A stretch of DNA of 63,329 nt, counting the filler, from Octopus bimaculoides (Eukaryota), in NCBI RefSeq assembly GCF_001194135.2. It is 4 parts of 4 records of this genome, joined end to end, with 100 filler letters (N's around TTAATTAATTAA, not from the genome) between each part and the next. Parts side by side here need not be neighbours in the genome. Positions count along the whole stretch, not along the records: positions 1 to 29,390 come from NC_068984.1; 3 more parts are not named here. One strand, 5' to 3'. The position numbers and the translations under genes were made by a program. The notes beneath the pieces were generated by a model. That model was not told the origin of the DNA, did not search any database, and saw only the letters and a program-made list of their open reading frames with translations. Positions 620-29,380 of this stretch are shown one piece after another; the stretch's first letter is position 1, and every line of letters begins with the position of its first letter.

Positions 620-2135
620 GTCAGCTAATTAATCATAATAGCTCAGTTATATCAAAAAGCATAAACTGAGTTTAATAGACCGATGGATCATGATGGCTCA
701 GTTTATATAAAATGCCATAGAATGAGTTTGATAATGTGACCAAATAGTTAATATAATAATAATATCAGCTGAATTATAAAACCCTTCAACTGGATTTTAG
801 TTGTCTGATTAATCATTAGAGCTCAGTGAATAAAGCAATAAAAGAAACTGAGTTATCCCCTAATACAATAATGAGTGTAGTGTTTNNNNNNNNNNCAGTG
901 AAGGAGAAGTAGTGAGAGTAATAGCCCTGACTGTTTGTATTAGAGTGCATTGTTGTACCATTCAAAAGTTTTTATTCTTTACAAACAATACGCAATGCTT
1001 CAAGCGAACTACAATACTCTCCTATCTCTACGCCTGGGCCAGGCCAAGTTCGCAACTGCTAGAGACAACAGGGATATAGCCCTGACTGTTTGTATTAGAG
1101 TGCATTGTTGTACCATTCAAAACTTTTTATTCTTTTCAGTTATAGTTTTATAAAGAGCAATCATGATAGATTAGTTTACTTAAAAAACTATATACTGAGT
1201 TTAGAATTAAGTTTAAAATTAGTGACAAGTATAACAACTCAGTCCATATAAAAAAGCCCATAAACTGAGTTACTAATCATAACAGCTCAATACATATTAA
1301 AACCAAAAACTGGTTTATCAATCATAATGGCTCAGTTTATCTATTGAAGGTATAATCTCAGTTTAAATTTCTGATCAAGTATAATGGCTCAGTTGATATA
1401 AAAAGCCATAAACTGAGTTTAATAACCTGATCAAGCATAACGGCTCCAGTTTATATTAGGAGCCATAAAGTGAGTTATTGAGTATAATGGCTCAGTTTAC
1501 CTGAAAGTCCATAACTTGAGTTTAAAAGTTTGATCAATTATAATGGCTCAGTCATCATCATTATCATCATTGTTGAACATCCGCTTTCCATGCTGGCATG
1601 GGTTGGACGGTTTGACTGAGGACAGGTGAGCCAGAGGCTGCACCAGGCTTCAATCTGATCTGGCAGAGTTTCTACAGCTGGATGCCCTTCCTAATGCCAA
1701 CCACTCTGAGAATGTAGCGGGTGCTTTTTACGTACCACCAGCACGAGGGCCAGTCAGGTGGTACTGGCAACGGCCACTCTCAAATGGTGTTTTTTAAGTG
1801 CCACCTGCACAGGAGTCAGTCCAGCGGCACTGGCAATGACCTCACTCAAATGTTGTTTTTCACATGCCACCAGCACAAGTGCCAGTAAGGCAACACTGGT
1901 AACGATCACGCTCGAATAGTCCTTGAAGCCATCAACCAAACTGTAAAATTCAAACCACTCATATCAGCTCAGTTTATATAAAACCCCAAACACTGCGTTT
2001 AAATTTCAAATCAATCATAACAGCACAGTTTATAAAAAAAGACATAAACTGAATTTAGTTGTCTGATCAATTCTAATGGCTCAATTTATATAAATAAAAA
2101 TCATGAACTGAGTTTAAAAATCTGATCAATCTTAA
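620..2135. repeat. Degenerate ~50-60-bp tandem array, consensus GATCAATCATAATGGCTCAGTTTATATAAAAAGCCATAAACTGAGTTTAA
   Basis: About 18-20 recognisable units in three blocks (620-860, 1150-1550, 1940-2135), interrupted by a gap-associated segment and a SINE. Confidence 0.8.
1551..1930 (-). mobile_element. SINE family C ((GAT)n tail, internal ~57-nt tandem subrepeats) inserted into the 55-bp array
   Basis: tcatcatc...catccgctttccatgctggcatgggttggacg...gagtttctacagctggatgcccttcctaatgccaacc, then three gccaccagcac...ctcaaatg units. Confidence 0.88.
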
Positions 2136-2451: not shown

Positions 2452-2610
2452 TATTGCTGTGGCTGTGTGGTGAGAAGTTTGCTTCCCAACCACATGGTTC
2501 TAGGTTCAGCCCCACTGTGTGGAACCTAGGGCAAGTGTCTTCTATAATAGCCTCAGGCCAACCAAAGCCTTGTGGATCGGTTTGGTTAATAGAAACTGCA
2601 AGAAACACAT

Positions 2611-2641
<31 letters not shown>

Positions 2642-2850
2642 TGTGTGTGTGTTTATCGCCCACCACCACTTGACAACCGGTGTTGGAATATTTATGTCCT
2701 TGTAACTTAGCAGTTTGGCAAAAGAGACTGACAGAATAAGTACCAAACTTTAATATAGAAAAAAAGCACTGGGGTTGATTCATTCAACTTCAATTTTTCA
2801 AGGCAGTGCTCCAGCATGGCTGTAGTCTAATGAGTGAAATAATTATGAAT
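2452..2850 (+). mobile_element. tRNA-derived SINE family A, near full length
   Basis: tRNA-like head GTGGCTGTGTGGT...GGTTCAGCCCC, core gggcaagtgtcttcta, (TG)n, tail gtgctccagcatggc. Confidence 0.85.
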
Positions 2851-3244: not shown

Positions 3245-3556
3245 CAGAATGACTCAGGAGCTGAGATCGTTGCCAGTGCCGATGGACTGGCTCCTGTGCA
3301 GGTGGCATGTAAAATACACCATTTCGAGTGTGGCCATCACCAGTACCGCCTGACTGGCCCTCGTGCCAGTGGCACGTAAAAGCACTCACTACACTCTCGG
3401 AGTGGTTGGCGTTAGGAAGGGCATCCAGCTGTAGAAACTCTGCCAAATCAAATTGGAGCCTGGTGTCGCCTCCTGGTCCACCAGTCCTCAATCAAATCGT
3501 CCAACCCATGCTAGCAGGAAAAGCGGACGTTAAACGATGATGATGATGATGATGAT
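3245..3556 (+). mobile_element. SINE family C
   Basis: Subrepeats, then ggaagggcatccagctgtagaaactctgcc...ccaacccatgctagc...cgttaaacgatgatgatg. Confidence 0.88.
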
Positions 3557-7501: not shown

Positions 7502-7868
7502 CACAGGAGTGGTTGAGTGGTATGTAGCTTGCTTAGCAACCACATGGTTCCGGGTTCAGTCCCACTGCGTGGTAGCTCAGGCAAGTGTCTTCCACTATAA
7601 CCTCGGGCCGACCAAAGCCTTGTGAGTGGATTTGATAGATGGAAACTGAAAGAAGACCGTCATATATATGTGTGTGTGTGTGATTGTGTGTCCGTGTTGT
7701 CCCCACCAGCATCGCTTGACAACCCCATAATGTAGCGGTTCGGCAAAAGACACTGATAAAATAATACTAAGCTTACAAAGGGTAAGTTCTGGGGTCGATT
7801 TACTCGACTTAAGGCGGTGCTCCAGCATGGTCGCAGTCAAATGACTGAAACAAGAGAAAAGATTAAAG
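7502..7868 (+). mobile_element. SINE family A, near full length
   Basis: Same head, core, TG tract and tail gcggtgctccagcatggtcgcagtcaaatgactgaaacaag. Confidence 0.88.
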
Positions 7869-8099
7869 ATCTTATTGAATCTGATAAGATTTTTATAACA
7901 AACCACATACCATGCGTATTGTGGAGGCCAAAAGTCAACAATGTGTTGAAGTATTGAATCAAAAGGACCTAACCCTTTTAATTCCAATCCCTTGTCGCCA
8001 CATAATCTCAACTTTTGAGTGAAGAGATAGCCCAATTTTTTTATGGCAATATTTTAATTGGTGTGATATAACCAAAATCTACCCATCACCCTATGATAT

Positions 8100-8850
8100 T
8101 TATTTCTTTATTGCCGACAGGGGGCTAAACATAGAGGGGACAAACAAGGACAGCAGACAAAGGGATTAAGTTGATTATATCGACCCCAGTGCGAAACTGG
8201 TTCTTATTTAATCGACCCCGAAAGGATGAAAGGTAAAGTCAACCTCGATGGGATATATCACCCTATAATATTGAAAGGCGGTGGTGAGCTGGCAGAAACG
8301 TTAGCACGCCGGGCGAAATCCTTAGCAGTATTTCGTCTGTCACTACGTTCTGAGTTCAAATTCCGCCGAAGTCGGCTTTACCTTTCATCCTTTCGGGGTC
8401 GATTAAATAAGTGCCAGTCACGCACTGGAGTCGATATAATCGACTTAATCCGTTTGTCTGTCCCCTCTGTTTGTAGCCCCTTGTGGGCAATAATGAAATA
8501 AGAAACGTTAGCAGAAACGTCGTCTGCCACTACGTTCTGAGGTCGACTTTACCTTTCATCCTTTCGTCGTCCATAAATTAAGTACCAGTTGCGTACTGGG
8601 GTCGATGTAATCGACTTAATCCGTTTGTCTGTCCTTGTTTGTCCCCTCTATGTTTGGCCCCTTGTGGGCAATAAAGAAATAAGAAACGTTAGCATCCCGG
8701 CCGAAATGCTTAGCAGTATTTTGTCTGTCTTTACGTTCTGAGTTCAAATTCCGCCGAGGTCCACTTTGCCTTTCATCCTTTTGGGGTCGATAAATTAAGT
8801 ACCAGTTGCGTACTGGAGTCGATCTAATCGACTAGGCTTTGTGCTTGGAG
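8100..8850. mobile_element. Cluster of four SINE family B copies (one minus at ~8100-8250, three plus at ~8275, ~8506, ~8685)
   Basis: Repeated gttagcacgccgggcgaaat...ttctgagttcaaattccgccgaggtcgactttgcctttcatcctttcggggtcgat...gtaccag, plus its reverse complement upstream. Confidence 0.92.
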
Positions 8851-9345: not shown

Positions 9346-11529
9346 TGTATTATTAAAAAAAAAAGAAGAGTTTTATTCATTTGATCATAATGATCAAATA
9401 TTGTGATTGATTAATTAAGGTAAGGAGTGTTTACGTCAAAGGTACCCATCCTGGGGGTAACGTACCTACACTTCCTAGGAGTGCAAGGTAGCATTTCAAG
9501 TGAATGTTACGTAGTGAGGTAAACATGCTTTATAAAAATCGTTTTTCAGGTTAAAATTATTAAACTCTTAAAAAATTAGATTTGTTTAGTCAGGTACAAG
9601 AAAGAATGTTGTTATTCTATAATACTGAATGAGGTGAAATTTTAAAAAAATATTAATTAGTCACTAGAAAATTGATTCTTTTTTTTGTTTACCTTCAGAT
9701 GTAATATGACTTTTGTAGAAGTGTGAAAATTAATCAGTTCTCTTAATAAGTTGGAGAAAGAGGAAAAGGCTGGAAGAAATTGCTCCCGTTAGTAGAGCGG
9801 TCTGCTAGAAATAGCAGTCATATCTCCGTCAAATCTTGAAAGCCACATTGGATAGTTACAGTTCATTCCTATAACTTTTCGTTAATATATTCTTTAATCT
9901 CGGTTGGGAATATTGCTTTGAAAATTGTGGGAATATATTCATAGTTTAAAACAAATTGGGTCCTTCCCTTTTAGCATTTAAACCGAAAAGACTAAAAGTA
10001 AAAATAATTTTTCTCACTGTTATACAAAGCTTCAATATGTATGTATGTGCATATGTGTTATACAAAGCTTCAATATGTATGTATGCATGTATGTGTGTGT
10101 GTGTATATGTATGTATGTATGTTTGTATGTGTGTATGTATGTACTGGGCCTAACGAGTTAAATTTTTGTAAGAAACCTACGAAATCGCATCCGGCCGAAT
10201 TAAACTTTTTAAAAAAAATAATATATACGGTGGTGCACCAGCATGACCGCAGCCACTTGGCTGAAACACATAAATAAATAAATATACACATACATACATA
10301 AATAAATACAAGTATGTATGTATGCATATATATATATTGTATGTATGTATGTATGCGTGTATGTATTAATATAAGTATGTATGCATACATATTGTATGTT
10401 TGTATGTATGTATTAAAGAATTAAATGAATGTAAACATATAAAAAAAATTGCTTGAATAAACTAAGGAATATCAAACTTGTCTGCTTTTCATACAAGTTT
10501 ACTTTATTCAATAATTTTACACCTGACGGAAACCGAATAAGAAAAGGAGAAATATGTTTCCTATTTGACCTACTTTCGCGACATTGTTATTTGTGAAGGT
10601 ATTTTGTTCTTGTGACAGTGAATGAAGTCATTTCCCTGGATTAAAGGTGTGTGGAGATGAGACATACAATAAAGGAAAAAATCTATTCTCAGCTTTCATT
10701 TATAAACTACACATTACTGTTACAACTACAACAATAATATATGAATAGGTCAGTTGAAACACCAGGGGAAAAAATAAATTAATTAAGGGTTACATTGGAA
10801 AGCTAGAGCGGGAAGGTGTTTATCAAAGGTCACCCTGTGCAAATAGTTTTTCGAACCTAACTTGATGCACTTTTCAATAAATAATCAAGGTAAAGATTGT
10901 TATAGAACCTAGTGTAATTATCTCCCTTAGACACAGTGCGTGAATGTTAGAGGCGAAGGTTAGACGGGGATGGTGGATGTCGGTTCGATAACGACTTAGT
11001 GTACAAACCACACACACAACTACTGACTGTTGATTTTAACATCATTAACTCAGCCGAAGGTAACTGCTTACTTTGAAATGTACCTTATTGTGTGTGTGCG
11101 TGAGTGATACACCTGGACTCCCAATAAACTTCTTTCTTTATGAATAAAAGTATGATTTTTTTTTCATTTTACAAAGTTCAACTCTGTTTAAAGTATTATA
11201 CTAAAATATGCTAATAAATAGAGCCATTTTTTTACACGGTTTAAACTTACGAGAAGTTTATGCTCTCTTTTTTTTTTTTTTTTTTGCAAGCTAATTATAA
11301 AAAAATATTACACACCTATAAAATACGTTAAATGCAATATTAAGTTTTTTTTTAGAATACTGACGTGGGTATTGATTAGAAATGATAATCACTTCCACTT
11401 TTGAAAAACTGCTACAAATATATAAGCTACAAGTAAAGGTATTTTACATTCAGGTAAAAATGTATTACTAAGAAAGACGGTCAGCCTTTGTAGTATTTTT
11501 ATTTTGTTATTATTATTTTTTTTTCTCAT

Positions 11530-12330: not shown

Positions 12331-13018
12331 GTTTCAACATCTCTATCACCCAAAACGACACTTGTCTATCTTCACACTGCTCTTTCTAAATTAACTAAGA
12401 TAATAACCTAAACATTACTACGAAAAATGTCGAATTAGCTGTGTCTTTGTTATCTTTATTAGACTGCTGCTATGAAAGAAGGTCTGCAACAATTATTATT
12501 TCTTGCTAGCTTCTCTCCTCTCTACATACATTATTTATTTTACTACACATGTATACAGTAAACATATTTACTGATACACTTTACATATATCTATTTATAA
12601 CCTCTGTTTTTCTCTGCTTTTACTTTCTCTCTTCTACTTCCTTTTATGTTTTCTTTGCTGCAAGTTTTCAAAAGTATTTCCTAACAACTTACTGCAAAAG
12701 GTTACCAGTCGACGACACCTGACCGGGGGAAGTTGTCACTACCTTCCTCGCTGCCAGCTTCTTGCTTTTTTCCCCCCCTATTTTTTTCTTTCTTTCTAAA
12801 CACCAAAACACAACACAATACAAGGATATCTGTTTTATTTGATTTTTTTTTATATATATTTTATTTTGCTTTCTACATTTTCGATGAACGAGCCTGAAGG
12901 AAATCTATTCGCCGTCATTTGGATCTATACGACTCAATGCTGGAAATATTACCTACTGCGCTTTTGGGTCTTTCTTCCTTCTTTAGTTCATTGTTGATAT
13001 TGATATTTGGCAGATAAC

Positions 13019-13481
13019 ATGCATAAAAACAGACAGTCGTCCGGTGGTTCTTCCTCGTCGGCATCTATGCCTATGCCATCGTCACAACTGTCTCATCATC
13101 CACAGCAACCACAGAACAAAGCCCTGCCGCCTCCCGTCAACAATAAGTTGCTGCCTCCACCTATAAAAAAAGATGTCAAACACTGGAGCACCAGACTCCA
13201 GGAGACAGTCGTATCCATCCCTTCTGATGGTGGCGGCGGCGGCGGACAGGGTTCGTCGATTACCATTAAGGGCGGTGCTGATACGGGCTTCTTCTGTTAT
13301 GTTGGAGATGTCCGCCACGACGAAGTAAAATATCATTCCGGTGGAAAACTACATTCTGATGATCTAATCTTGGAGATCCAAGGACAGAAAGTATCGGGAT
13401 ATACATTAAGAGATGTTAACATCTGGCTGAAGCAAGTCAGTCAGAATGGAGCTCCTGTACTCATTAAAACTTTACGTTCAG
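13019..13481 (+). CDS. MAGI: First coding exon of a MAGI-family protein (membrane-associated guanylate kinase, inverted): low-complexity N-terminus plus PDZ0 domain
   Basis: Translation HWSTRLQETVVS...ITIKGGADTGFFCYVG...DDLILEIQGQKVSGYTLRDV...VLIKTLRSG matches the MAGI PDZ0 pattern (HW..V.E...GGA..G.F.YVG...ELLLEV.G..VSG....DV...KAVRQG). ATG at 13019 (the ORF track starts at an upstream TTG, 13007). The exon ends CAG|GTAAGT at 13481/13482 after 463 nt (phase 1), the position and phase I recall for vertebrate MAGI exon 1. Confidence 0.92.
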
Positions 13482-16400
13482 GTAAGTCCTAACATTACAT
13501 TCACGAATAAGCAGTTGACAATTTGTTTTTGTTTGTTTTCTTTTTCATTACCAGCCTTAAAAAATATCATATATCTACCTGTAACAAGCTCACACACACA
13601 CACTCACTATCTCCGCCGCCACCTCCACCTCGTTGTTGATTCATCAACAAACATATCCAGTCGTTGTTTATTGTATTTTACTTTTGTTCGACATACGTTG
13701 CTTGTCTTATGACGAGTTTTTAATTTACTAGAGCAATCTAAAGCCTCATAATGATTATAAACCCCCCAAGTTTATATAAGTGTGGGCCATTGACCCAGCA
13801 TTTTCCTCTCTGCGGCCTTCATCTACCGCCTCTAATCTAATGTCAACAGTTTTTGTTATGCTTCTCTTGAAGCGACCTTAACTGCTATTTACCCAAACGA
13901 GTGCCAATGGTTTCTGCTAGAGGCCGCTTCCCACTTCTCTCTCTATTTCAATTAGTTATCAACAAGTGTCCTCGTTGTTTCACCTTTCAGTAACTGGAGA
14001 CAACATTACTCATTAAATTTCACCGACCGTCGTAAGATATAAATCGAGAGTGGAGTAGTGGTGAGCAATGGAAATAGGGAATTAAAATTATTTCAGTGTT
14101 CAGGCTCATATTTCACATTACTCAATTTAAAATATTCCCTTAATTTATTTTTCATTATAAAGACAGAAACGAACTTCCATTGCCGTTGTCATTATGTGAT
14201 GTTATTATTTTTTGTTTTTTACAAGTTAAAGTTAAGGAAATATAATTATTATAAATCATTTCTGTTTGTTGAAAGAAAAATAATCAAAGAATGAGAATGA
14301 AATGCAGTCGAACGTCTAATATATTTGCTTTAGAACAAACACAACCCAGTTTTCTGATAAACGATCACCTTCATACCTGCAAACTACTTCCGACAAACAA
14401 GTATTTGCAAATTAAAATTATGTGCTCAACACGCGCTGCGTGTAAGCATATAATTACATTACACTTCGATAAGATTTTCGTTGCATTTACGAAATTCCTG
14501 TGAATATTGTATACACATAGATGCATGTGTGTGTGTGTGTTTAGTGTTGATTGTCGAAAAAGAAAAGATAGTATAACAGATTAATAATACTTTTTTGTTG
14601 GGTTAGTCTGTTGCTATATATATATATATATATATATAATCATTTTCTTTTAATGAAGACAAGGTGCCAAATTTTAAGTGAACATGACATTGTATCTATA
14701 TAATCTGTGTGGCGTACGGTTTTGCCGCCGTTGAGGTTGCTCCCTGTTATTTTTCTTCCAACAAGTAACAAACATAAAAATAAAAAAATGAATTAAAAAA
14801 AAAAACCTGAAGCAAAGGCTCCCTGTGGTGACTGACATATTGCAACAGGTAAATGAAAGGTGTATCAGTGAAGCAAGTATTCACTACGTGTAGTTAAAAG
14901 CTTTTTCTTTTTTTATCGGACTAAACAGAGCATACTGTTTCTTTTTCCTTATAAAATTTAAATACATTGATCTGTTTACTTGTTTCTGTTATATATTTTA
15001 TCGAGAATTATCGACAGCCCCTATAACATTTCTAAAAGCAATTAAGCACAAACAGGTAAAGCTGAAAAATGTTTAGTCATATTTGTAATAAATAACAACA
15101 ACAATAATAGACAAAATTTGTGACACATTTCAGCAACTGTGTGTTTTTAATGACCTATTTCTAATTTATCGAAATGTTTTGGTCCTTCTATTAGTGTATC
15201 GGATACATTACTACTAGGTTGTATATTCATTTCATTATCGCTTTCAACTGAATAGTTTTTTTATGAACTTCGTTGGTGGATCTTGTCGTGTTATAACTAT
15301 TCTCTGGTTTCAATGATTTAAGAGCGAGAAGAAAAAAAATCCTTTTGCTATTTTCATTACAAGATTGTTACTGACTAGAGAGTACAGAAGCTTTTTAAAG
15401 TCATGTTTCAGTATTGCTAGGATCTTGCAAATAAGCAATGCTTTTTCATTGAATAATATGTTTAAAGGTTGTTTGGTAAAAATGGGTGTGGATTCCACCC
15501 ACAATGAATAACTCACATTGGTTCATTGTAAACGGGTACATTTTATCTGTTGTATTTATTTTTCATTAAGTTTTTTTTTTGTCCAAATCTTTGGGATGGT
15601 CATCATATATATAGGTTTGTTACTGCGATTCTTCTGCTTCCAAGCGTTTTCAAAATGTTAACAACCTTACTTTGGAATGGAATCAATGCTCGATCGAATT
15701 CTTGTTTCTGGAGAGAACCAGGTTTAAAGAGCACTTGAAAATTATTGATTTCGATGGATAATGGTAATAACAGATGATAAATATGCTTTGTGTGCAATTG
15801 AATTTAAGTGTTAATTAAGTACAATTTCTGTAATTATTTGCCTTATTATTCAGGGCTAAGTGAAACTCGGTTGAATTAAAAAGTTACATGTTTTAAATGG
15901 AAGTGGAGGCTAGTATAAAGTTAAAACCGGAGAGAAAACCATGCGGAATTATTATTTTTGGCCTTGATGTCAAATCTGACGCGCGGTCAACAGCCAAAAG
16001 TTACATAACGTTTGGTGTCGATCCATTTCCAGTTGCAAACGGTAAACGTTTGTCAGAGCTGTCAGCAGCAACTCTGCTAGTAGAAGGAAGAAGACAGGCA
16101 ATCTGTCTCCAACTATAGCTTCGTTTCAACAATGGATTGGTTGACGGCGGGGAAGAGAGGGAGGGGAGCGGGGGGCGCATTAAAAATGACCAAAGCGACA
16201 ATGGTAATAGTTCGTTCGTCAGCCGAGACACACAGACACACATGTACACGTGTAAGTGCGTACACGTGCACACACACACATGCACGTGCTCGCACGCACA
16301 CGTGCATTCACAGACGCAATGCATGCAGCTATCACTTTGCACCAACATCGAAAACGTCTGTTACCCTTGCATATGCATTTTAAAGTTGCATATTGGGCGA

Positions 16401-18420: not shown

Positions 18421-18684
18421 CAAGCGCGCATGCACACACTCACTCACACACACACACATACACACACACTTTGTAGAAGTTACAGTGACTCAAGAGCTGA
18501 GAGTTTCACATTATATATACTCATGTTTTGAATTTTATTTTCCGGTTTGCATCCCCAAAACTGTATATATATATCAATGTTTGTTTTTCATGTTCAGTTA
18601 TGATAAAAACAATTTTACGTTACTCCATATTTTTGTAGAGTACAAATTTAGTATTCTTAAACAAGAATATTTATTTCTTTATTG

Positions 18685-18890
18685 ACTACAGGGGACAAAC
18701 AAGCACAGACAAACGGATTAAGTCGATTACATCGACCCCAGTGCATAACTGGTACTTGCTTATTGACCCCGAAAGGATGAAAGGCAAAGTCGACCTCTGC
18801 AGAATTTGAACTCGGAATGTAACGGCAGATGATATACCACTAAACATTTTGCTAAGTGTGCTAATGATTCTGCCAGCTCACCGGCCTTTC
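18685..18890 (-). mobile_element. SINE family B
   Basis: gaccccgaaaggatgaaaggcaaagtcgacctc...gaatttgaactc...gattctgccagctc. Confidence 0.88.
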
Positions 18891-19464: not shown

Positions 19465-19885
19465 AATTGCAGGCATGACTTTGTGGTTGGGAAGCATGTT
19501 CTGTACCCACATGGTTCCAGGTTCAGTCCTACTGTGTAACACCTTGGACAAGCGTCTTCTACTATGGTTCCAGGCTGACCAATACCTGTGAATGAATTTG
19601 GTAGACAGAAGATGGAAATTGTGTGGAAGCCCATCATGTGTGTGTGTGTGGGTGTGGGTGTGTGTGAGTGCCTTTGTTTGATCCTCCCACCTATCACTTG
19701 ACAACTGGTGTTGGTTTGTTTATGTCACTGTAACCTAAGTTTTGGCAAGCGAGGTTAATGGAATAAGTACCAAATAGAAAAAAGATAAAATCCTGGTATC
19801 AATTTGTTTGACCGAACCGTTTAAGGTGGTGCTCCAGCATGGCTGCAGTCCAGTGATTGCAACAAGTAAAGGATAAAAAGATGGT
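19465..19885 (+). mobile_element. SINE family A, near full length
   Basis: Head, core, TG tract and tail all present. Confidence 0.8.
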
Positions 19886-20309: not shown

Positions 20310-20695
20310 TAAGGTCTATTGTCTTTTCCTTGTTTCAGTCATTTGACTGCAGCCATGCTGGAGCACTGCCTGGAAAAGATTTTAGTTGAACAAATTGACC
20401 CCAGGACATTTTTTGTTTTTTTTAAAGTCTGGTACTTATTTTATCAGTCTCTTTTGCCAAACCACAGGGATGTAAACAAACCAGTGCCAGTTATCAAGCA
20501 ATGCAGGTGGGACACAAAGCACATACACATATTTGATGGACTTCCACACAATCTCCATCTATCAAATATACTCACGAGGCATTGCTTAACCTGGGGGGCT
20601 ATGGAAGAAGACAATTCCCAAGTTGCTGCGCTGTGTGATTGAACCTGAATCCATGTGGTTTCAAAGCAAGCTTCTTAACCCCACGTCCACACTTG
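20310..20695 (-). mobile_element. SINE family A, diverged
   Basis: Reverse-complement tail cttgtttcagtcatttgactgcagccatgctggagcac through head gaacc...catgtggtt. Confidence 0.75.
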
Positions 20696-21544: not shown

Positions 21545-21907
21545 ACTGTGCCGGTGGCACGTAAAAAGCACTGCCTTGCTGGCACTTATGCCAGTGGTAC
21601 ATGGAAAACAACATTTGAGCGAGGGCGTTGCCAGTGCCGCTGGACTCGCTCCTGTGCAGGTGACACATAAAAAACACCATTTGAGTGTGGCCGTTGCCAG
21701 TACTGCCTGACTGGCCCATGTGCTGGTGGCACGTAAAAGCACCAACTACACTCTCGGAGTGGTTGACGTTAGGAAGGGCATCCAGTTGTAGAAACTCTGC
21801 CAGATCAGATTGGAGCCTGGTGCAGCCTCTGGCTCACCAGTACCCAGTCAAACCATCCAACCCATGCTAGCATGGAAAGCAGACATTAAACGATGATGAT
21901 GATGATG
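21545..21907 (+). mobile_element. SINE family C
   Basis: Three subrepeats and the canonical 3' module with (GAT)n tail. Confidence 0.9.
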
Positions 21908-22145
21908 AAACTGCAGTGAGTTGGTTGAACTCTGTGAAAACAATGGCTGGGAGGCATTATGCCTTTGTGTAGATATAAGTATTAGAGGATTTGTTGGCAG
22001 CCAGTTTCACTTGGTACTCAAGAGTCTTGGACTAGCTGTGAAGGAGAGAAAATATGTTGCCAGAAAATTGTTGGAAGTTTCTAAGAAAGCAAATCATTAC
22101 ATCTGGCTCAAAGGGGAAGATGAATGTTGCAGCAAGAATGAGCAT
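21908..22145 (+). mobile_element. HERO/R2-superfamily non-LTR retrotransposon C-terminal restriction-like endonuclease fragment
   Basis: ELVELCENNGWEALCLCVDISIRGFVGSQ...LKSLGL...SKKANHYIWLK matches the HERO-type tail pattern EL..EC...GW...PVEVGCRGF.G.S....LG......AE..S.WLW.KR. Confidence 0.6.
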
Positions 22146-24830: not shown

Positions 24831-25864
24831 AAACTTTAAACTGCACGACGAGTAATCAATATTTAGAATCTCATTTGTATTATTTCTGTTCATGTATTGT
24901 AATTGTATCCTTCGTTAAGAGATCTGGGTTTGAATGTTATGCAGAGTATTTGGAGAAAGCAAAACAAACCAAGAGAGATTGTTTATAAGATATTAGCTTA
25001 CATATATTTCATTAACATAGGGTGATTATTAGTTATATGATGCAAATTACATAATCAAAATTTAATGTCAAATCATCAGAGAAGTGTAACACTGATATGT
25101 AACATTGCTGGATTGGAAAGATGACAGAATTCACAATGGTGGAGATGGTTGGCCTGGAATTGGTAGCCATCTCTGTTATGATGAATCCTATCATCCTTTA
25201 AATCAAATGTTACAAATAAAAGTCACTCATCTCTGATGATTTGACATTAGTTATATAATGCATATTACATTATCAAGACTTAATCACCTTATGTTAATGA
25301 AATGACTGTAAGATGGTGTAGCTAAATGTCTTATAAGTAATAACATTTTTCTTTTCTATATGTGTAGGTGTACATGCCTGTATATATGTATGTGTGTATA
25401 TGTTAAAGTTAAACCTTCTGTCCATCTGGGATTGAAAATACTAGTTTCTCAAACATACTAATCATAGATTCAACTATTCATGATATTGATTCTAAACTTA
25501 GTAATGTTTGTTATTTATGATAACCATATTCATCTTATTCTTGAAATATTAGATTTCAGTTAATTATTTTAATAAGATGTTTTTGTTATCAAATTAAACA
25601 TCTAGAAATATAAATTGTTTGCATCACTTTCACCGATGATGATTTAACTTGCTTCAATCCTGCTACAATGGAAAACTTTTCGTCCTTCAGTTTTATTTTT
25701 ATTTATTTATTTATTTATGTGTTTCAGCCAAGTGGCTGCGGTCATGCTGGTGCACCACCGTTAATTGTTAATGTTTGATATAGAAATCTACCTCATGAGG
25801 TATTTCACCACTTGATTGTAATCATGCTCACACAACATATTTGACTTTATTTCAATCGTATATT

Positions 25865-26789: not shown

Positions 26790-27200
26790 TCTTTACTCTT
26801 TTACTTGTTTCAGTCATTTGACTGTGGCCATGCCGGAGCACCACCTTTAGTCGAGCAAATCGACCCCAGGACTTATTCTTTGGAAGCCTAGTACTTATTC
26901 TATCGGTCTCTTTTGACGAACCACTAAGTTACGGGGTCTCTTTTGACGAACCACTAAGTTACGGGGACGTAAACACACCAGCATCGGTTGTCAAGCGATG
27001 TTGGGGGGACAAACACACACACACACATATATATATATACACATATATATATATACACATATATACGACAGGCTTCTTTCAGTTTCCATCTACCAAATTC
27101 ACTCACAAGGCTTTGGTCGGCCCAAGGTGCCACGCAGTGGGACTGAACCCGGAACCATGTGGTTGGTAAGCAAGCTACTTACCACACAGCCACTCCTGCA
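26790..27200 (-). mobile_element. SINE family A, near full length, with internal ~31-bp tandem duplication (~26905-26967)
   Basis: Close match to family A; gtctcttttgacgaaccactaagttacgggg occurs twice in tandem. Confidence 0.9.
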
Positions 27201-27839
27201 CCTATATTATATAAATATATATTTGTATCATATATAAATATTTAAAACAGGAAGTTGGTATTGCACACCTAGCGGTGTACTCAAGAGGTTTGGTATCCAA
27301 AGGGTTAATAATATTGTTTTATATCTGGTGTTTCCAGATTCAGTAGACGAGCCTTGTTTAAGTTACTACATAGTGGGACTGAACCTGGAACCATATGATA
27401 GGAAAGCCAGCATCTTAACTATGCAGCCACATCTGTACCTAAATAATTATAGGAAATGAAAACGTAGCTGATATGGAGAATATTAATATTTGTTAGTGAA
27501 ATATTCCATGTTTATAAAGAACGGTATTCTAACTTCTCTAAGGATAGCCGCTGAAATAATTGAATGCTGATTGCAATATTGGAAAATACTAGAATGAATT
27601 CTTGCTTCTGTCAAAATACCTTTCATAAAGATAAATACAGTCTCTTCTGTGTAGTTGTATAGCCATAGTGATTCTCATGCAATTAACCAAAGTCATATGG
27701 TAGATGATAAAATATGAGATTTCAATGTATTATTAATAGAAATGTGTTGTGGCAAGACACCAGTATACGTCAGCAAATAATTTGCTTGCTGATTTCTATG
27801 AACAAGATCCTTGATAGATTCATTGTTTTGGTAGTGTTG

Positions 27840-27890
27840 CTTTGGCTGAAGAGACACCCAATAAGGTTGAAACATCATGGTATCTCAAGG
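27840..27890 (+). ncRNA. Hammerhead ribozyme motif, probably degenerate (upstream copy of tandem pair)
   Basis: CUUUGG CUGAAGA GAC ACCCAAUAAG GUU GAAA C AUCAU G [GUA] UC UCAAGG. Same core and stems as 28172-28221, with a 3-nt insertion before the cleavage site. Confidence 0.55.
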
Positions 27891-28171
27891 TTTCCTTACA
27901 TTAAATTGCATGTTTTATTAACACACATTGTCTAAAGAGATGAGATGATCATCACTGGGGAAAAAGCAACAGTGAACAACATATTCACATTCAAATCTGT
28001 TAGAATTTATTAAGAATGAACAGATGTGTTGTTGTTTCAATTCTTACTGTTCTCTATGCACCCCGTGAGTTACTATGTTTGGCAGACATCAGGACACATC
28101 AGCAAATAATTTGTTGGCTGATTTCTATAAACAAGGTTCTGTACTCTTGTAAGATTCATTGGTCCAGAGTA

Positions 28172-28221
28172 GTTTTGACTGACGAGACATACAATGAGGT
28201 TGAAACATCATGTCTTAAAGT
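28172..28221 (+). ncRNA. Type I hammerhead ribozyme motif (downstream copy of tandem pair)
   Basis: GUUUUGA CUGACGA GAC AUACAAUGAG GUU GAAA C AUCAU G UC UUAAAGU. 7-bp stem I with wobbles, intact core, stem II GAC/GUU, short stem III, GUC triplet. Confidence 0.72.
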
Positions 28222-29161
28222 CCTCTTATAGTGTATCGTGTGTGTTAGGAAGATGCTTTGTCTAAAGTGATGGCAAAATAGTAAAATCAAATATTTTCGT
28301 TGATATATAAATAATAGCCGGACAAAATTGTTTCAGTTTCTTTTTGTGTTTGTATCCATCTTTCATATTCTTCAGTTACTCAATTTTAAATAGATTCTTA
28401 CATTCTGACAATGCCTTTCACAATCTTTGAATTACTCATGGTAAGAACTAGGGTCATGCTGTTATCAAATATTTTAATTGGGTCAGTTACAGGTTAATGA
28501 AGCTAATTATGGAAGCAACAAAATATTGTCCATTCACTGTTTGATTCAAAGCTATCTTTCTACGATGAAGATTTATTTATTGAAGAAATTTCCTACACAA
28601 CAAGATAGAATTACAAATGAGTCTGAACTTTGATGGTCTATAATTCATTGAAATGTGAAAAACAAGCTGAAAACATACCATTCCTGTGACATCTGTTGTT
28701 TGTAAACATTAATTACTGACTACTGTCATTTTGATTCTTCATGAAAAATGGAATCTTCCAGAACCACTTTATTCCTATTAAATCAAAAGTTCAATTTTTA
28801 GTTTTTCATTTCTTCAAAGTCTTTTTTTACTAGATATCGGAAAAAAAGAATCTTAATGAATAATTGAAATGACTTTATTTGTATATGCAATTAACCAGTC
28901 AATCGTACATCGATCTTATTTTAAACAATGTAATATTTGGGAAAGTTATGCAATTAACCAATCTATGCAATTATCCAGTAAACAATTAAGCATGTTCAAC
29001 TGTTCTGTATATTTGTGTTAAAATTTAATGTTCTCTTCCGATTGCATGTAATTCTACAATTTGTGGTGTTATAAAACTCTATAACTTTCTATAATGTTAT
29101 ATAAAACTACAACATTTTATAGTGCTATATATATATATATATAATGTCATATATGAAATTT

Positions 29162-29380
29162 GAAGGTGGCACGCTGGCAGAATCATTAGAATGCCAGGCA
29201 AACTGCATGGCAGCATTTTGTTTGTCTTTACGTTCAGAGTTCAAATTCCAGTGAGGTCAACATTGCCTTTCATCCTTTCAGAGATCAATAAAATAAAGTA
29301 GCATTTGAATACTGGGGGTCAATGATACTGACTAGCTCTCTCCCCCGAAATTGCTGGCCTTGGTCCAAAATTTGAAACCA
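29162..29380 (+). mobile_element. SINE family B
   Basis: ctggcagaatcattag...gagttcaaattcc...cctttcatcctttc...actggggg tcaat...gaaattgctggccttg. Confidence 0.82.

What the first reader, a model, noticed from the sequence alone, without database searches (positions are those of the whole stretch)
27748..28272. Tandem hammerhead pair 330 nt apart: retrozyme-like dimer in the sense strand of the MAGI intron
Seen: two diverged copies of a unit, each with CUGANGA-GAC..GUU-GAAAC-AUCAUG..UC. Stem I differs between copies (CUUUGG/UCAAGG vs UUUUGA/UUAAAG) yet stays paired, and an upstream UCAGC..GCUGA hairpin is also kept. Predicted cut sites 27884 and 28214 are 330 nt apart. Established: metazoan non-LTR retrozymes are ~170-400-nt tandem units with type I hammerheads that self-process into monomers and circular RNAs, probably mobilised by Penelope-like elements. 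Inference: an octopus retrozyme family, which I do not recall being characterised. The upstream copy has a 3-nt insertion and may be inactive.
Basis: partly seen in the sequence, partly recalled or inferred. Interest (0 to 1): 0.85.

Follow-up and report, generated by a model that had tools for sequence, protein, structure and literature searches.

The report
Decayed hammerhead-ribozyme repeat in MAGI intron
Two old, diverged copies of a ~200-bp repeat lie 330 bases apart downstream of a mollusc MAGI exon; each carries a type I hammerhead ribozyme motif (one intact in its core but weak, one broken), so this looks like a worn-out remnant of the known "retrozyme" kind of mobile repeat and is only a modest lead.

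Summary
Blocks 27745-27942 and 28076-28272 are homologous (72-81% identity). Each carries CUGANGA...GAAA...UC in type I hammerhead (HHR) topology, with predicted cut sites after C27884 and C28214, 330 nt apart.

For a real hammerhead: copy 2 matches Rfam Hammerhead_1 over the whole model, and an explicit descriptor hits only these two sites in the window (0.005 chance hits per shuffled window). All 22 core, helix II and helix III positions are identical between the copies, against 72% identity elsewhere (p=0.0013). Loop 2 resembles the axolotl retrozyme loop 2.

Against an active retrozyme:
- The Rfam score is 23.6 bits, below the gathering score of 34.
- Copy 1 gives no Rfam hit; a 3-nt insertion splits its helix III.
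- Helix II is only 3 bp and starts with a G·U pair.
- The hammerhead fold is about 13 kcal/mol above the predicted optimum.
- The 330-nt monomer folds no better than shuffles (z=+0.26).
- The 133-nt spacer is not repeated, so the array has only 1.6 units.

No further copy could be retrieved; the source genome is not searchable here and the species is unverified.

Verdict: probably an old relic of a type I HHR tandem-repeat (retrozyme-type) element, a new member of a known kind. Present activity is doubtful. Interest is modest.

The parts
27745..27942 (+). Repeat block 1 (upstream copy of the ~200-bp unit)
   Evidence: blastn 27745-27942 against 28076-28272, 72% identity, E 1e-24; MAFFT alignment A1
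27770..27792 (+). Conserved hairpin of copy 1 (UCAGCAA...UUGCUGA)
   Evidence: Fold z=-2.6; lies in direct-repeat family D1, 84% identity
27839..27891 (+). Hammerhead motif of copy 1, degenerate. Helix I 27839-45 with 27885-91; CUGAAGA 27846-52; helix II GAC 27853-55 with GUU 27866-68; GAAA 27869-72; GUA inserted at 27880-82 inside helix III; C17 = 27884
   Evidence: Found only with the relaxed descriptor (helix III 1 bp); no Rfam hammerhead hit at E<=10 on a 78-nt slice; sequence read
27943..28075 (+). Single-copy spacer between the blocks; would be the rest of the 330-nt unit
   Evidence: No significant similarity to the sequence before block 1 or after block 2
28076..28272 (+). Repeat block 2 (downstream copy)
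28098..28122 (+). Conserved hairpin of copy 2 (AUCAGC...GCUGAU)
   Evidence: Fold z=-2.3; the most conserved 30-nt stretch of the unit starts at 28099
28172..28221 (+). Hammerhead motif of copy 2, core intact. Helix I 28172-78 with 28215-21; CUGACGA 28179-85; helix II GAC 28186-88 with GUU 28199-201 and 10-nt loop 2; GAAA 28202-05; helix III ACA 28205-07, loop UCA, UGU 28211-13; C17 = 28214, predicted cleavage between 28214 and 28215
   Evidence: Strict descriptor hit; Rfam RF00163 Hammerhead_1 at 28173-28220, 23.6 bits, model positions 1-45 of 45
27885..28214 (+). Hypothetical 330-nt monomer released if both hammerheads cut
   Evidence: Coordinates; GC 35%; linear MFE -71.0 kcal/mol with z=+0.26 against shuffles
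13007..13492 (+). Context: MAGI-like exon (N-terminal PDZ) that sets the host-gene strand
   Evidence: PDB 7ykf MAGI2, E 7.8e-12; Pfam PDZ; mollusc homologues

Best explanation
This is an old, decaying 1.6-unit remnant of a tandem repeat that carries a type I hammerhead ribozyme. That is the genomic form of a metazoan non-LTR 'retrozyme' or hammerhead satellite. It lies in the sense orientation downstream of exon 1 of a mollusc MAGI-like gene.

How such elements work (established for the family, PMC7229834, and inferred here): a transcript running through the array folds a hammerhead in each unit. Each hammerhead cuts after H17, leaving 5'-OH and 2',3'-cyclic phosphate ends. Unit-length RNAs are then circularised by a tRNA ligase (RtcB type) and are thought to be copied back into DNA by the reverse transcriptase of an autonomous element such as a Penelope-like element.

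At this locus the host pre-mRNA would supply the transcript. Copy 2 keeps every catalytic-core nucleotide, but helix II is very weak and helix III is short and nearly palindromic, so it would cut poorly or only as a dimer. Copy 1 is disabled by a 3-nt insertion in helix III. Release of a 330-nt monomer or circle from this locus today is therefore unlikely. At most the intron RNA is nicked at 28214|28215.
For: Shown here:
- Two same-strand homologous blocks with a 330-nt period.
- Copy 2 aligns to the whole Rfam Hammerhead_1 model at 23.6 bits.
- The descriptor matches only these two sites in the window, against 0.005 hits expected per shuffled window.
- All 22 core, helix II and helix III positions are identical between the copies, against 120 of 166 elsewhere (Fisher p=0.0013). 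The 8 substitutions inside the motif fall on N7 (1), loop 2 (3) and helix I (4), and the helix I changes all preserve pairing.
- Loop 2 resembles the Ax330 retrozyme loop 2.
- The helix III near-palindrome ACAU-C-AUGU resembles ACAUGU of Ax330. The dimer duplex energy is -5.2 kcal/mol, against -6.0 for Ax330.
- GC is 35% and the unit length lies within 170-400 nt (PMC7229834).
- The unit is not one of the abundant SINE-like families that fill the window.
- Decay: 19-28% divergence between the copies, the GTA insertion in copy 1, and no Rfam hit on copy 1.

Background: Rfam hammerhead type I loci are reported in a cephalopod genome, 235 in the giant squid. Retrozymes are proven in a mollusc, Mytilus.
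Against: - The Rfam score is below the gathering score (23.6 against 34). The hit was lost to the filters when 1.2 kb or the whole window was searched.
- Helix II is 3 bp with G·U at 10.1-11.1, whereas the proven retrozyme hammerheads have at least 4 GC-rich pairs.
- The hammerhead fold is +6.5 kcal/mol against an MFE of -6.7, with a competing GAGACAU/AUGUCUU helix.
- The monomer is not highly self-paired.
- The spacer is not repeated and no target-site duplication was found.
- No other family member was found anywhere, though the searches had little power.
- The perfect conservation of the constrained positions over about 25% divergence fits a purely neutral relic poorly. It hints at past or present selection.
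Confidence: 0.65

Rival explanations
1. Live retrozyme. The locus belongs to a currently active cephalopod retrozyme family, and this dimer itself self-processes from MAGI pre-mRNA into a ~330-nt linear and circular RNA.
For: - The core of both copies is intact at the nucleotide level.
- 22 of 22 constrained positions are conserved despite about 25% divergence, which suggests selection.
- Helix I pairing is kept through 4 changes.
- Weak monomeric hammerheads such as axolotl Ax330 still work as dimers, and the helix III duplex energy here is similar.
- The sense orientation in a transcribed gene gives a route to expression.
Against: - Copy 1's helix III is split by a 3-nt insertion, and Rfam gives no hit there.
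- Helix II is only 3 bp with G·U, and the hammerhead fold is 13 kcal/mol above the MFE.
- The monomer is not self-paired, z=+0.26.
- The units are 19-28% diverged, unlike young active arrays.
- Only 1.6 units are present.
Confidence: 0.12
2. Chance look-alike. An ordinary local duplication of intronic DNA happens to contain a hammerhead-like string. There is no ribozyme ancestry and no mobile element.
For: - The score is below Rfam's gathering score; scaled to a 2-3 Gb genome, 23.6 bits is expected a few times by chance (rescaled).
- The relaxed descriptor hits 0.08 times per shuffled window.
- Helix II is weak, and the fold is not favoured.
- No other copies were retrieved.
- The first-stage reader selected this site from many windows, so a selection effect applies.
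Against: - The strict descriptor expectation is 0.005 per window, and lower still for 7 bp in helix I and 3 bp in helix III.
- The per-family Rfam E for the window is about 3e-5.
- Independently, the motif sits in a repeat of retrozyme-typical period.
- The substitution pattern avoids all constrained positions (p=0.0013).
- Loop 2 matches the canonical type I loop.
- Jointly these are very unlikely by chance.
Confidence: 0.15
3. Penelope-like element debris. The two blocks are pseudo-LTR fragments of a deleted Penelope-like retroelement, which carry hammerheads in their flanking repeats.
For: - PLEs carry hammerheads in both flanking direct repeats, and solo or truncated copies are common.
- PLEs are abundant in cephalopods.
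- The layout here is direct repeat, short spacer, direct repeat.
Against: - PLE min-hammerheads have a 7-8 bp helix II, a 4-5 bp helix I and essentially no helix III. Here helix I is 7 bp, helix II 3 bp and helix III 3 bp, which is the canonical type I layout.
- The repeats are 133 nt apart rather than about 3 kb.
- None of the 10 window ORFs scanned against Pfam shows RT or GIY-YIG, and no ORF of 70 aa or more near the element looks coding. This is only a partial test.
Confidence: 0.05
4. Host-exapted intronic ribozyme. A hammerhead is kept by selection to cut MAGI pre-mRNA and tune its processing, like the amniote intronic hammerheads HH9 and HH10.
For: - Sense orientation inside a conserved neuronal scaffold gene.
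- Constrained positions are perfectly conserved between the paralogous copies.
Against: - No orthologous intron could be compared. The only related locus, L001, shares just the exon.
- There is no Rfam match to HH9 or HH10.
- The ribozyme is weak and its partner is broken.
- This explanation does not account for the second copy.
Confidence: 0.03

Closest known systems
Metazoan non-LTR retrozymes (Cervera & de la Peña 2020, PMC7229834), e.g. the Mytilus galloprovincialis ~350-390-bp repeats
   Same: - Type I hammerhead, one per unit.
- Head-to-tail units of a few hundred bp (330 here).
- Low GC.
- A mollusc precedent exists.
- Short helix III.
- Tertiary loop contacts are not obvious, as in Mytilus.
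   Different: - Only 1.6 diverged units are present.
- Helix II is 3 bp with G·U, against at least 4 GC-rich bp.
- The monomer is not highly self-paired.
- There is no sequence similarity to the Mytilus or coral units outside the core.
- There is no evidence of copy number, RNA or circles.
Amphibian satellite 2 and axolotl retrozyme hammerheads (HHR_Amex1 in Rtz_331, HHR_Amex2 in Rtz_353)
   Same: - 330-350-nt tandem unit.
- Very weak helix III: GAAACAUGUC in Ax330 against GAAACAUCAUGUC here.
- A weakened base of helix II, as in Amex2.
- Similar loop 2 (CCAAAAAGG against CCAAUAAGG).
- Weak as monomers and active as dimers.
   Different: - A vertebrate lineage with about 10^5 copies.
- A perfect even-length palindrome in helix III; here the palindrome is odd-length with a central C·C in the dimer.
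- The rest of the unit is unrelated.
Schistosoma Sm-alpha SINE-like hammerhead repeat (~335 bp) (from my own knowledge)
   Same: A canonical type I hammerhead with a CAAAUA-type loop 2, inside a ~335-bp repeated, tandem or dispersed non-autonomous element.
   Different: Sm-alpha has a stable GUCC/GGAC helix II and is highly repeated and transcribed. This comparison was not tested here.
Penelope-like element min-hammerheads (Cervera & de la Peña 2014, PMC4209133)
   Same: The hammerhead lies in direct repeats; dimeric action is proposed; the host phylum carries PLEs.
   Different: The min-hammerhead architecture (long helix II, short helix I, no helix III) is not met, and no RT/EN ORF lies between the repeats.
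Amniote intronic hammerheads HH9/HH10 (Rfam RF02275/RF02277; from my own knowledge)
   Same: Sense-strand hammerhead inside an intron of a protein-coding gene.
   Different: Those are single-copy and ultraconserved. Here the motif is part of a duplicated repeat, conservation across species is unknown, and there is no Rfam match to these families.

Membership tests
Hammerhead ribozyme, type I (Rfam RF00163) | Catalytic core CUGANGA / GAAA / UH in the right order, with helices I, II and III and the open end at helix I | tested here: met
   Copy 2 has helices of 7, 3 and 3 bp and all core nucleotides. Copy 1 has all core nucleotides, but helix III is interrupted.
Hammerhead ribozyme, type I (Rfam RF00163) | Covariance-model score at or above the curated gathering score (34 bits) | tested here: not met
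   Copy 2 scores 23.6 bits over the full model. Copy 1 gives no hit at E<=10. Nothing reaches gathering in the whole window.
Hammerhead ribozyme, type I (Rfam RF00163) | Helices supported by compensatory change | tested here: inconclusive
   With only two sequences: 4 one-sided wobble changes in helix I, all still paired; helices II and III invariant; no double changes.
Hammerhead ribozyme, type I (Rfam RF00163) | Self-cleavage after H17 | not testable with these tools
   Thermodynamics only: the hammerhead fold is +6.5 kcal/mol against an MFE of -6.7.
Metazoan non-LTR retrozyme | Hammerheads lie in short head-to-tail repeats of about 150-450 bp, from dimers to multimers | tested here: met
   Two same-strand hammerhead blocks with a 330-nt period. 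This is the minimal case: 1.6 units, with the spacer present once.
Metazoan non-LTR retrozyme | Low GC content (below 45-50%) | tested here: met
   GC is 35%. The surrounding DNA is 30-44%, so this does not discriminate.
Metazoan non-LTR retrozyme | Unit RNA is highly self-paired | tested here: not met
   MFE -71.0 kcal/mol against a shuffle mean of -72.5, z=+0.26. An old copy may have lost this feature.
Metazoan non-LTR retrozyme | Multi-copy family dispersed in the genome | not testable with these tools
   The source genome is not in any searchable collection. Protein-word, HMMER and DNA-pattern searches were empty or spurious. There are no further copies in the 29-kb window.
Metazoan non-LTR retrozyme | Expressed as unit-length linear and circular RNA | not testable with these tools
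   No RNA data are available here.
Penelope-like element pLTR min-hammerhead | Min-hammerhead architecture: helix II 7-8 bp, helix I 4-5 bp, minimal or no helix III | tested here: not met
   Helices I, II and III are 7, 3 and 3 bp, compared with the description read.
Penelope-like element pLTR min-hammerhead | The repeats flank an RT plus GIY-YIG ORF | tested here: not met
   Only 133 nt lie between the repeats. The only Pfam hit among the 10 window ORFs scanned is PDZ.

The most novel reading that the evidence does not exclude
Cephalopods carry a so far undescribed, still active retrozyme family whose type I hammerhead has an unusual helix II (G·U at 10.1-11.1, 3 bp, 10-nt loop) and an odd-length, nearly palindromic helix III, and works as a dimer. 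Copies embedded in the sense strand of long neuronal-gene introns such as MAGI would be transcribed with the host gene and would yield ~330-nt circular RNAs. The perfect conservation of the constrained positions between the two diverged copies would then reflect selection.
Probability: 0.15. Interest if true: 0.55.

Novelty: new member of a known kind. Interest (0 to 1): 0.3.

Why it matters
If a genome-wide search confirms a family, this would extend hammerhead retrozymes to cephalopods. No paper in the held library describes them there; only an Rfam count for the giant squid is on record. It would also provide a natural hammerhead variant with a wobble 10.1-11.1 pair and a minimal helix II, to test how far the motif tolerates decay.

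Cephalopod genomes are repeat-rich and their neural RNA biology is unusual, so an abundant ribozyme-made class of circular RNA would be worth knowing about.

As it stands, the locus is one decayed remnant of a well-known kind of element. It changes nothing about how such elements are understood.

Tried and rejected
- Rfam at gathering on the whole window and at E<=10 on 1.2 kb gave no hammerhead. The hit appears only when a 76-nt slice is searched, so the earlier negatives are filter losses, not absences.
- I tried to fish for other copies through spurious ORFs. The search for homologous proteins with ORF 28016-28231 and with a concatenated three-frame translation of both blocks found nothing. 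These searches are weak: the two window copies share only one 5-residue word with each other.
- The HMMER scan of 1.84 billion representatives gave one hit, P0041 (E 4e-19). I rejected it. It is a translated satellite with a ~74-aa period, each stretch scores only about 23 bits, and the matches do not cover the hammerhead.
- Exact-pattern DNA scans of the metagenome (twice), viral and prokaryote-genome collections found nothing. That was expected, since none holds cephalopod genomes.
- No orthologous intron was obtained. The best MAGI-exon relative, P0001/L001 (ENA ERZ21867824), shares only the exon at 73% nucleotide identity. The exon ORF itself is not on record.
- Extension of the repeat beyond the 200-bp blocks, and target-site duplications, were not significant.
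- tRNA-derived SINE idea: ARAGORN finds no tRNA in the window.
- High-copy SINE idea: rejected. The window's abundant repeat families each occur 3-5 times in the window, while the hammerhead unit occurs only as this pair.
Full report
**What is there**

The region holds two homologous blocks, 27745-27942 and 28076-28272, on the same strand. blastn gives 72% identity (E 1e-24) and MAFFT gives 81% mean column identity. Local indels make the offset vary between 329 and 333 nt.

The 133 nt between the blocks (27943-28075) match neither the sequence before block 1 nor the sequence after block 2. The structure is therefore 1.6 units of a 330-nt period, not a longer array. TRF does not report it. There are no other copies in the 29.4-kb window, and no significant target-site duplication.

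**The hammerhead motifs**

I wrote an explicit type I descriptor: CUGANGA, helix II, GAAA, helix III closed by A15.1-U16.1, H17, then helix I. It hits only these two sites in the window on either strand.

Copy 2 (28172-28221) reads GUUUUGA-CUGACGA-GAC[AUACAAUGAG]GUU-GAA-ACA[UCA]UGU-C|UUAAAGU. Its helices I, II and III have 7, 3 and 3 bp, and C17 is at 28214.

Copy 1 (27839-27891) has the same core and helix II. GUA is inserted at 27880-27882 inside helix III, which leaves only the A15.1-U16.1 pair contiguous. Its C17 is at 27884.

**Is it more than chance?**

Several independent lines say so:

- **Shuffles.** Among 3000 dinucleotide-preserving shuffles of the window, the strict descriptor hit 16 times (0.005 per window) and the relaxed one 233 times (0.08 per window).
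- **Rfam, copy 2.** Hammerhead_1 (RF00163) aligns to copy 2 over the whole model (positions 1-45) at 23.6 bits, with E 3.6e-4 for the 76-nt slice against 4227 families. That is below the gathering score of 34. The hit was lost to the speed filters when 1.2 kb or the whole window was searched. Rescaled to this one family, the E-value is about 3e-5 for the window, but a few chance hits for a 2-3 Gb genome. The score alone would not carry a genome-wide claim.
- **Rfam, copy 1.** No hammerhead hit at all.
- **Repeat period.** The motif sits in a direct repeat whose period is typical of hammerhead tandem repeats.
- **Substitution pattern.** The 22 positions that a hammerhead constrains (core, helix II, helix III) are all identical between the copies, against 120 of 166 other aligned positions (one-sided Fisher p=0.0013). 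The 8 substitutions inside the motif fall on N7 (1), loop 2 (3) and helix I (4).
- **Helix I.** The four changes there keep pairing in both copies. All are one-sided transitions through G·U; none is a double compensatory change.
- **Loop 2.** Copy 1 has CCAAUAAGG, which resembles CCAAAAAGG of the axolotl retrozyme Ax330. It also resembles the CAAAUA-type loop of classical type I hammerheads, which I recall from my own knowledge.

Together these make descent from a canonical metazoan type I hammerhead much more likely than a chance look-alike.

**How good is the ribozyme?**

It is poor:

- Helix II is only G·U, A-U, C-G, closed by a 10-nt loop. The proven retrozyme hammerheads of coral, mussel and axolotl have at least four, mostly G-C, pairs.
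- In nearest-neighbour terms the hammerhead fold of copy 2 is +6.5 kcal/mol, against an MFE of -6.7. The competing fold pairs GAGACAU with AUGUCUU and buries the cleavage site.
- The gap between hammerhead fold and MFE is about 13 kcal/mol. It is 3.6 for the coral ribozyme and 7.4 for the mussel one. It is about 16 for axolotl Ax330 with the structure I drew, and Ax330 cleaves only about 6% in an hour as a monomer and needs to act as a dimer.
- Helix III (ACAU-C-AUGU) is an odd-length near-palindrome. Two copies could form an extended intermolecular helix III of 4+4 bp around a C·C mismatch. Its energy is -5.2 kcal/mol, similar to -6.0 for Ax330 and far weaker than coral or mussel at about -15.
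- The cut-to-cut 330-nt RNA (27885-28214, GC 35%) folds no better than its shuffles (z=+0.26). Retrozyme RNAs are described as highly self-paired.

**Other conserved part**

A hairpin, UCAGC..GCUGA (27770-27792 and 28098-28122), is the best-conserved 30 nt of the unit. It folds modestly better than shuffles, with z of -2.6 and -2.3. Its role is unknown. In coral retrozymes a second conserved region besides the ribozyme is reported.

**Context**

ORF 13007-13492 (+) encodes an N-terminal PDZ domain. It matches MAGI2 (PDB 7ykf, E 7.8e-12) and Pfam PDZ. Its named homologues are molluscs (Batillaria, Lymnaea, Dreissena), and the best hit, at 80% identity, is unnamed.

The element is therefore in the sense orientation, 14 kb downstream of what looks like MAGI exon 1. 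'Intron' is a reasonable inference, and 'octopus' is unverified.

The window is packed with SINE-like dispersed repeats, each present 3-5 times. The hammerhead unit is not one of them. No tRNA is found. None of the 10 window ORFs scanned against Pfam shows an RT or endonuclease domain.

**Search for relatives**

The source genome is in none of the searchable collections.

- Protein-word searches with spurious ORFs of the unit found nothing.
- The HMMER scan returned only a translated satellite, which I reject as a summed weak match that does not cover the ribozyme.
- DNA-pattern scans of the metagenome, viral and prokaryote collections were empty.
- The nearest MAGI-exon locus (L001) shares only the exon.

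These negatives have little power. The question that would decide the matter, whether there is a family, stays open.

**Literature**

Metazoan non-LTR retrozymes are tandem units of about 170-400 nt with type I hammerheads and low GC. [quoted passage not shown] They are proven in a coral, the mussel Mytilus and the axolotl, and are inferred bioinformatically in many invertebrate phyla (PMC7229834).

Penelope-like elements carry a different, minimal hammerhead in their flanking repeats (PMC4209133). No paper in the library describes hammerheads or retrozymes of octopus. The giant-squid genome paper lists 235 Rfam Hammerhead_1 loci without further analysis (PMC6962438).

**Interpretation**

The most likely reading (about 0.65) is an old remnant of a type I hammerhead tandem repeat of the retrozyme kind, carried in a MAGI intron. 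Copy 2 has an intact core but is structurally weak, and copy 1 is disabled. Excision of a 330-nt RNA from this locus today is unlikely.

| Reading | Confidence |
|---|---|
| Old retrozyme-type remnant (best explanation) | 0.65 |
| Chance motif in a local duplication | 0.15 |
| Still-active retrozyme dimer | 0.12 |
| Penelope-like element debris | 0.05 |
| Host-exapted intronic ribozyme | 0.03 |

One point does not fit a purely neutral relic. All constrained positions survive across about 25% divergence, which hints that the units diverged while the ribozyme was still under selection. Only more copies or orthologues can settle this.

**Verdict**

This is a new member of a known kind, of modest interest (0.3). 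It is a useful seed for a genome-wide search, not a finding in itself.

Noticed in passing
window 13007-13492 (+): An exon-like ORF encodes a Ser/Pro/Gln-rich N-terminus followed by a PDZ domain. It matches MAGI2 (PDB 7ykf, E 7.8e-12) and mollusc PDZ proteins. No exactly matching protein is on record in the collections.
   Followed up: partly
window 2459-2845, 7504-7874, 19482-19881, 20310-20683, 26790-27198: Five copies, in both orientations and 67-83% identical, of a ~400-bp SINE-like dispersed repeat that ends in a (CA)n/(TG)n microsatellite. One copy lies about 550 bp upstream of the hammerhead blocks.
   Followed up: no
window 1552-1892, 3258-3555, 21572-21908: Three copies (86-88% identical, mixed orientation) of a ~340-bp GC-richer repeat with an internal 66-nt tandem period. 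TRF reports the period at 1720-1917 and 21605-21738.
   Followed up: no
window 8100-8833, 18671-18890, 29165-29315: A third dispersed repeat family. At 8100-8833 several copies are nested in direct and inverted orientation. The copy at the window's end (29165-29315) has a tRNA-like look, but ARAGORN calls no tRNA.
   Followed up: no
window 10227-10284 and 25704-25761: A 58-nt stretch is 100% identical in inverted orientation 15 kb apart. That is far better conserved than any other repeat pair in the window.
   Followed up: no
window 26905-26966: A perfect 2.1-copy tandem of a 30-nt unit (GGTCTCTTTTGACGAACCACTAAGTTACGG). It lies inside the SINE-like copy upstream of the element and looks like a recent duplication.
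   Followed up: no
L001 (ENA ERZ21867824, contig ctg123273l, 688,645 nt), gene at 10001-10462: A contig filed under a metagenome assembly carries a MAGI-like exon 80% identical in protein to the window's. It is evidently a eukaryotic (mollusc-like) contig. Outside the exon, only one 64-nt stretch matches the window.
   Followed up: partly
protein P0041 (1301 aa, from the representative library): This predicted 'protein' is the translation of a long satellite with a ~74-aa period. It reached E 4e-19 against a 71-aa spurious ORF only by adding up 17 weak matches. It is a reminder that repeat-derived ORFs inflate HMMER scores.
   Followed up: yes
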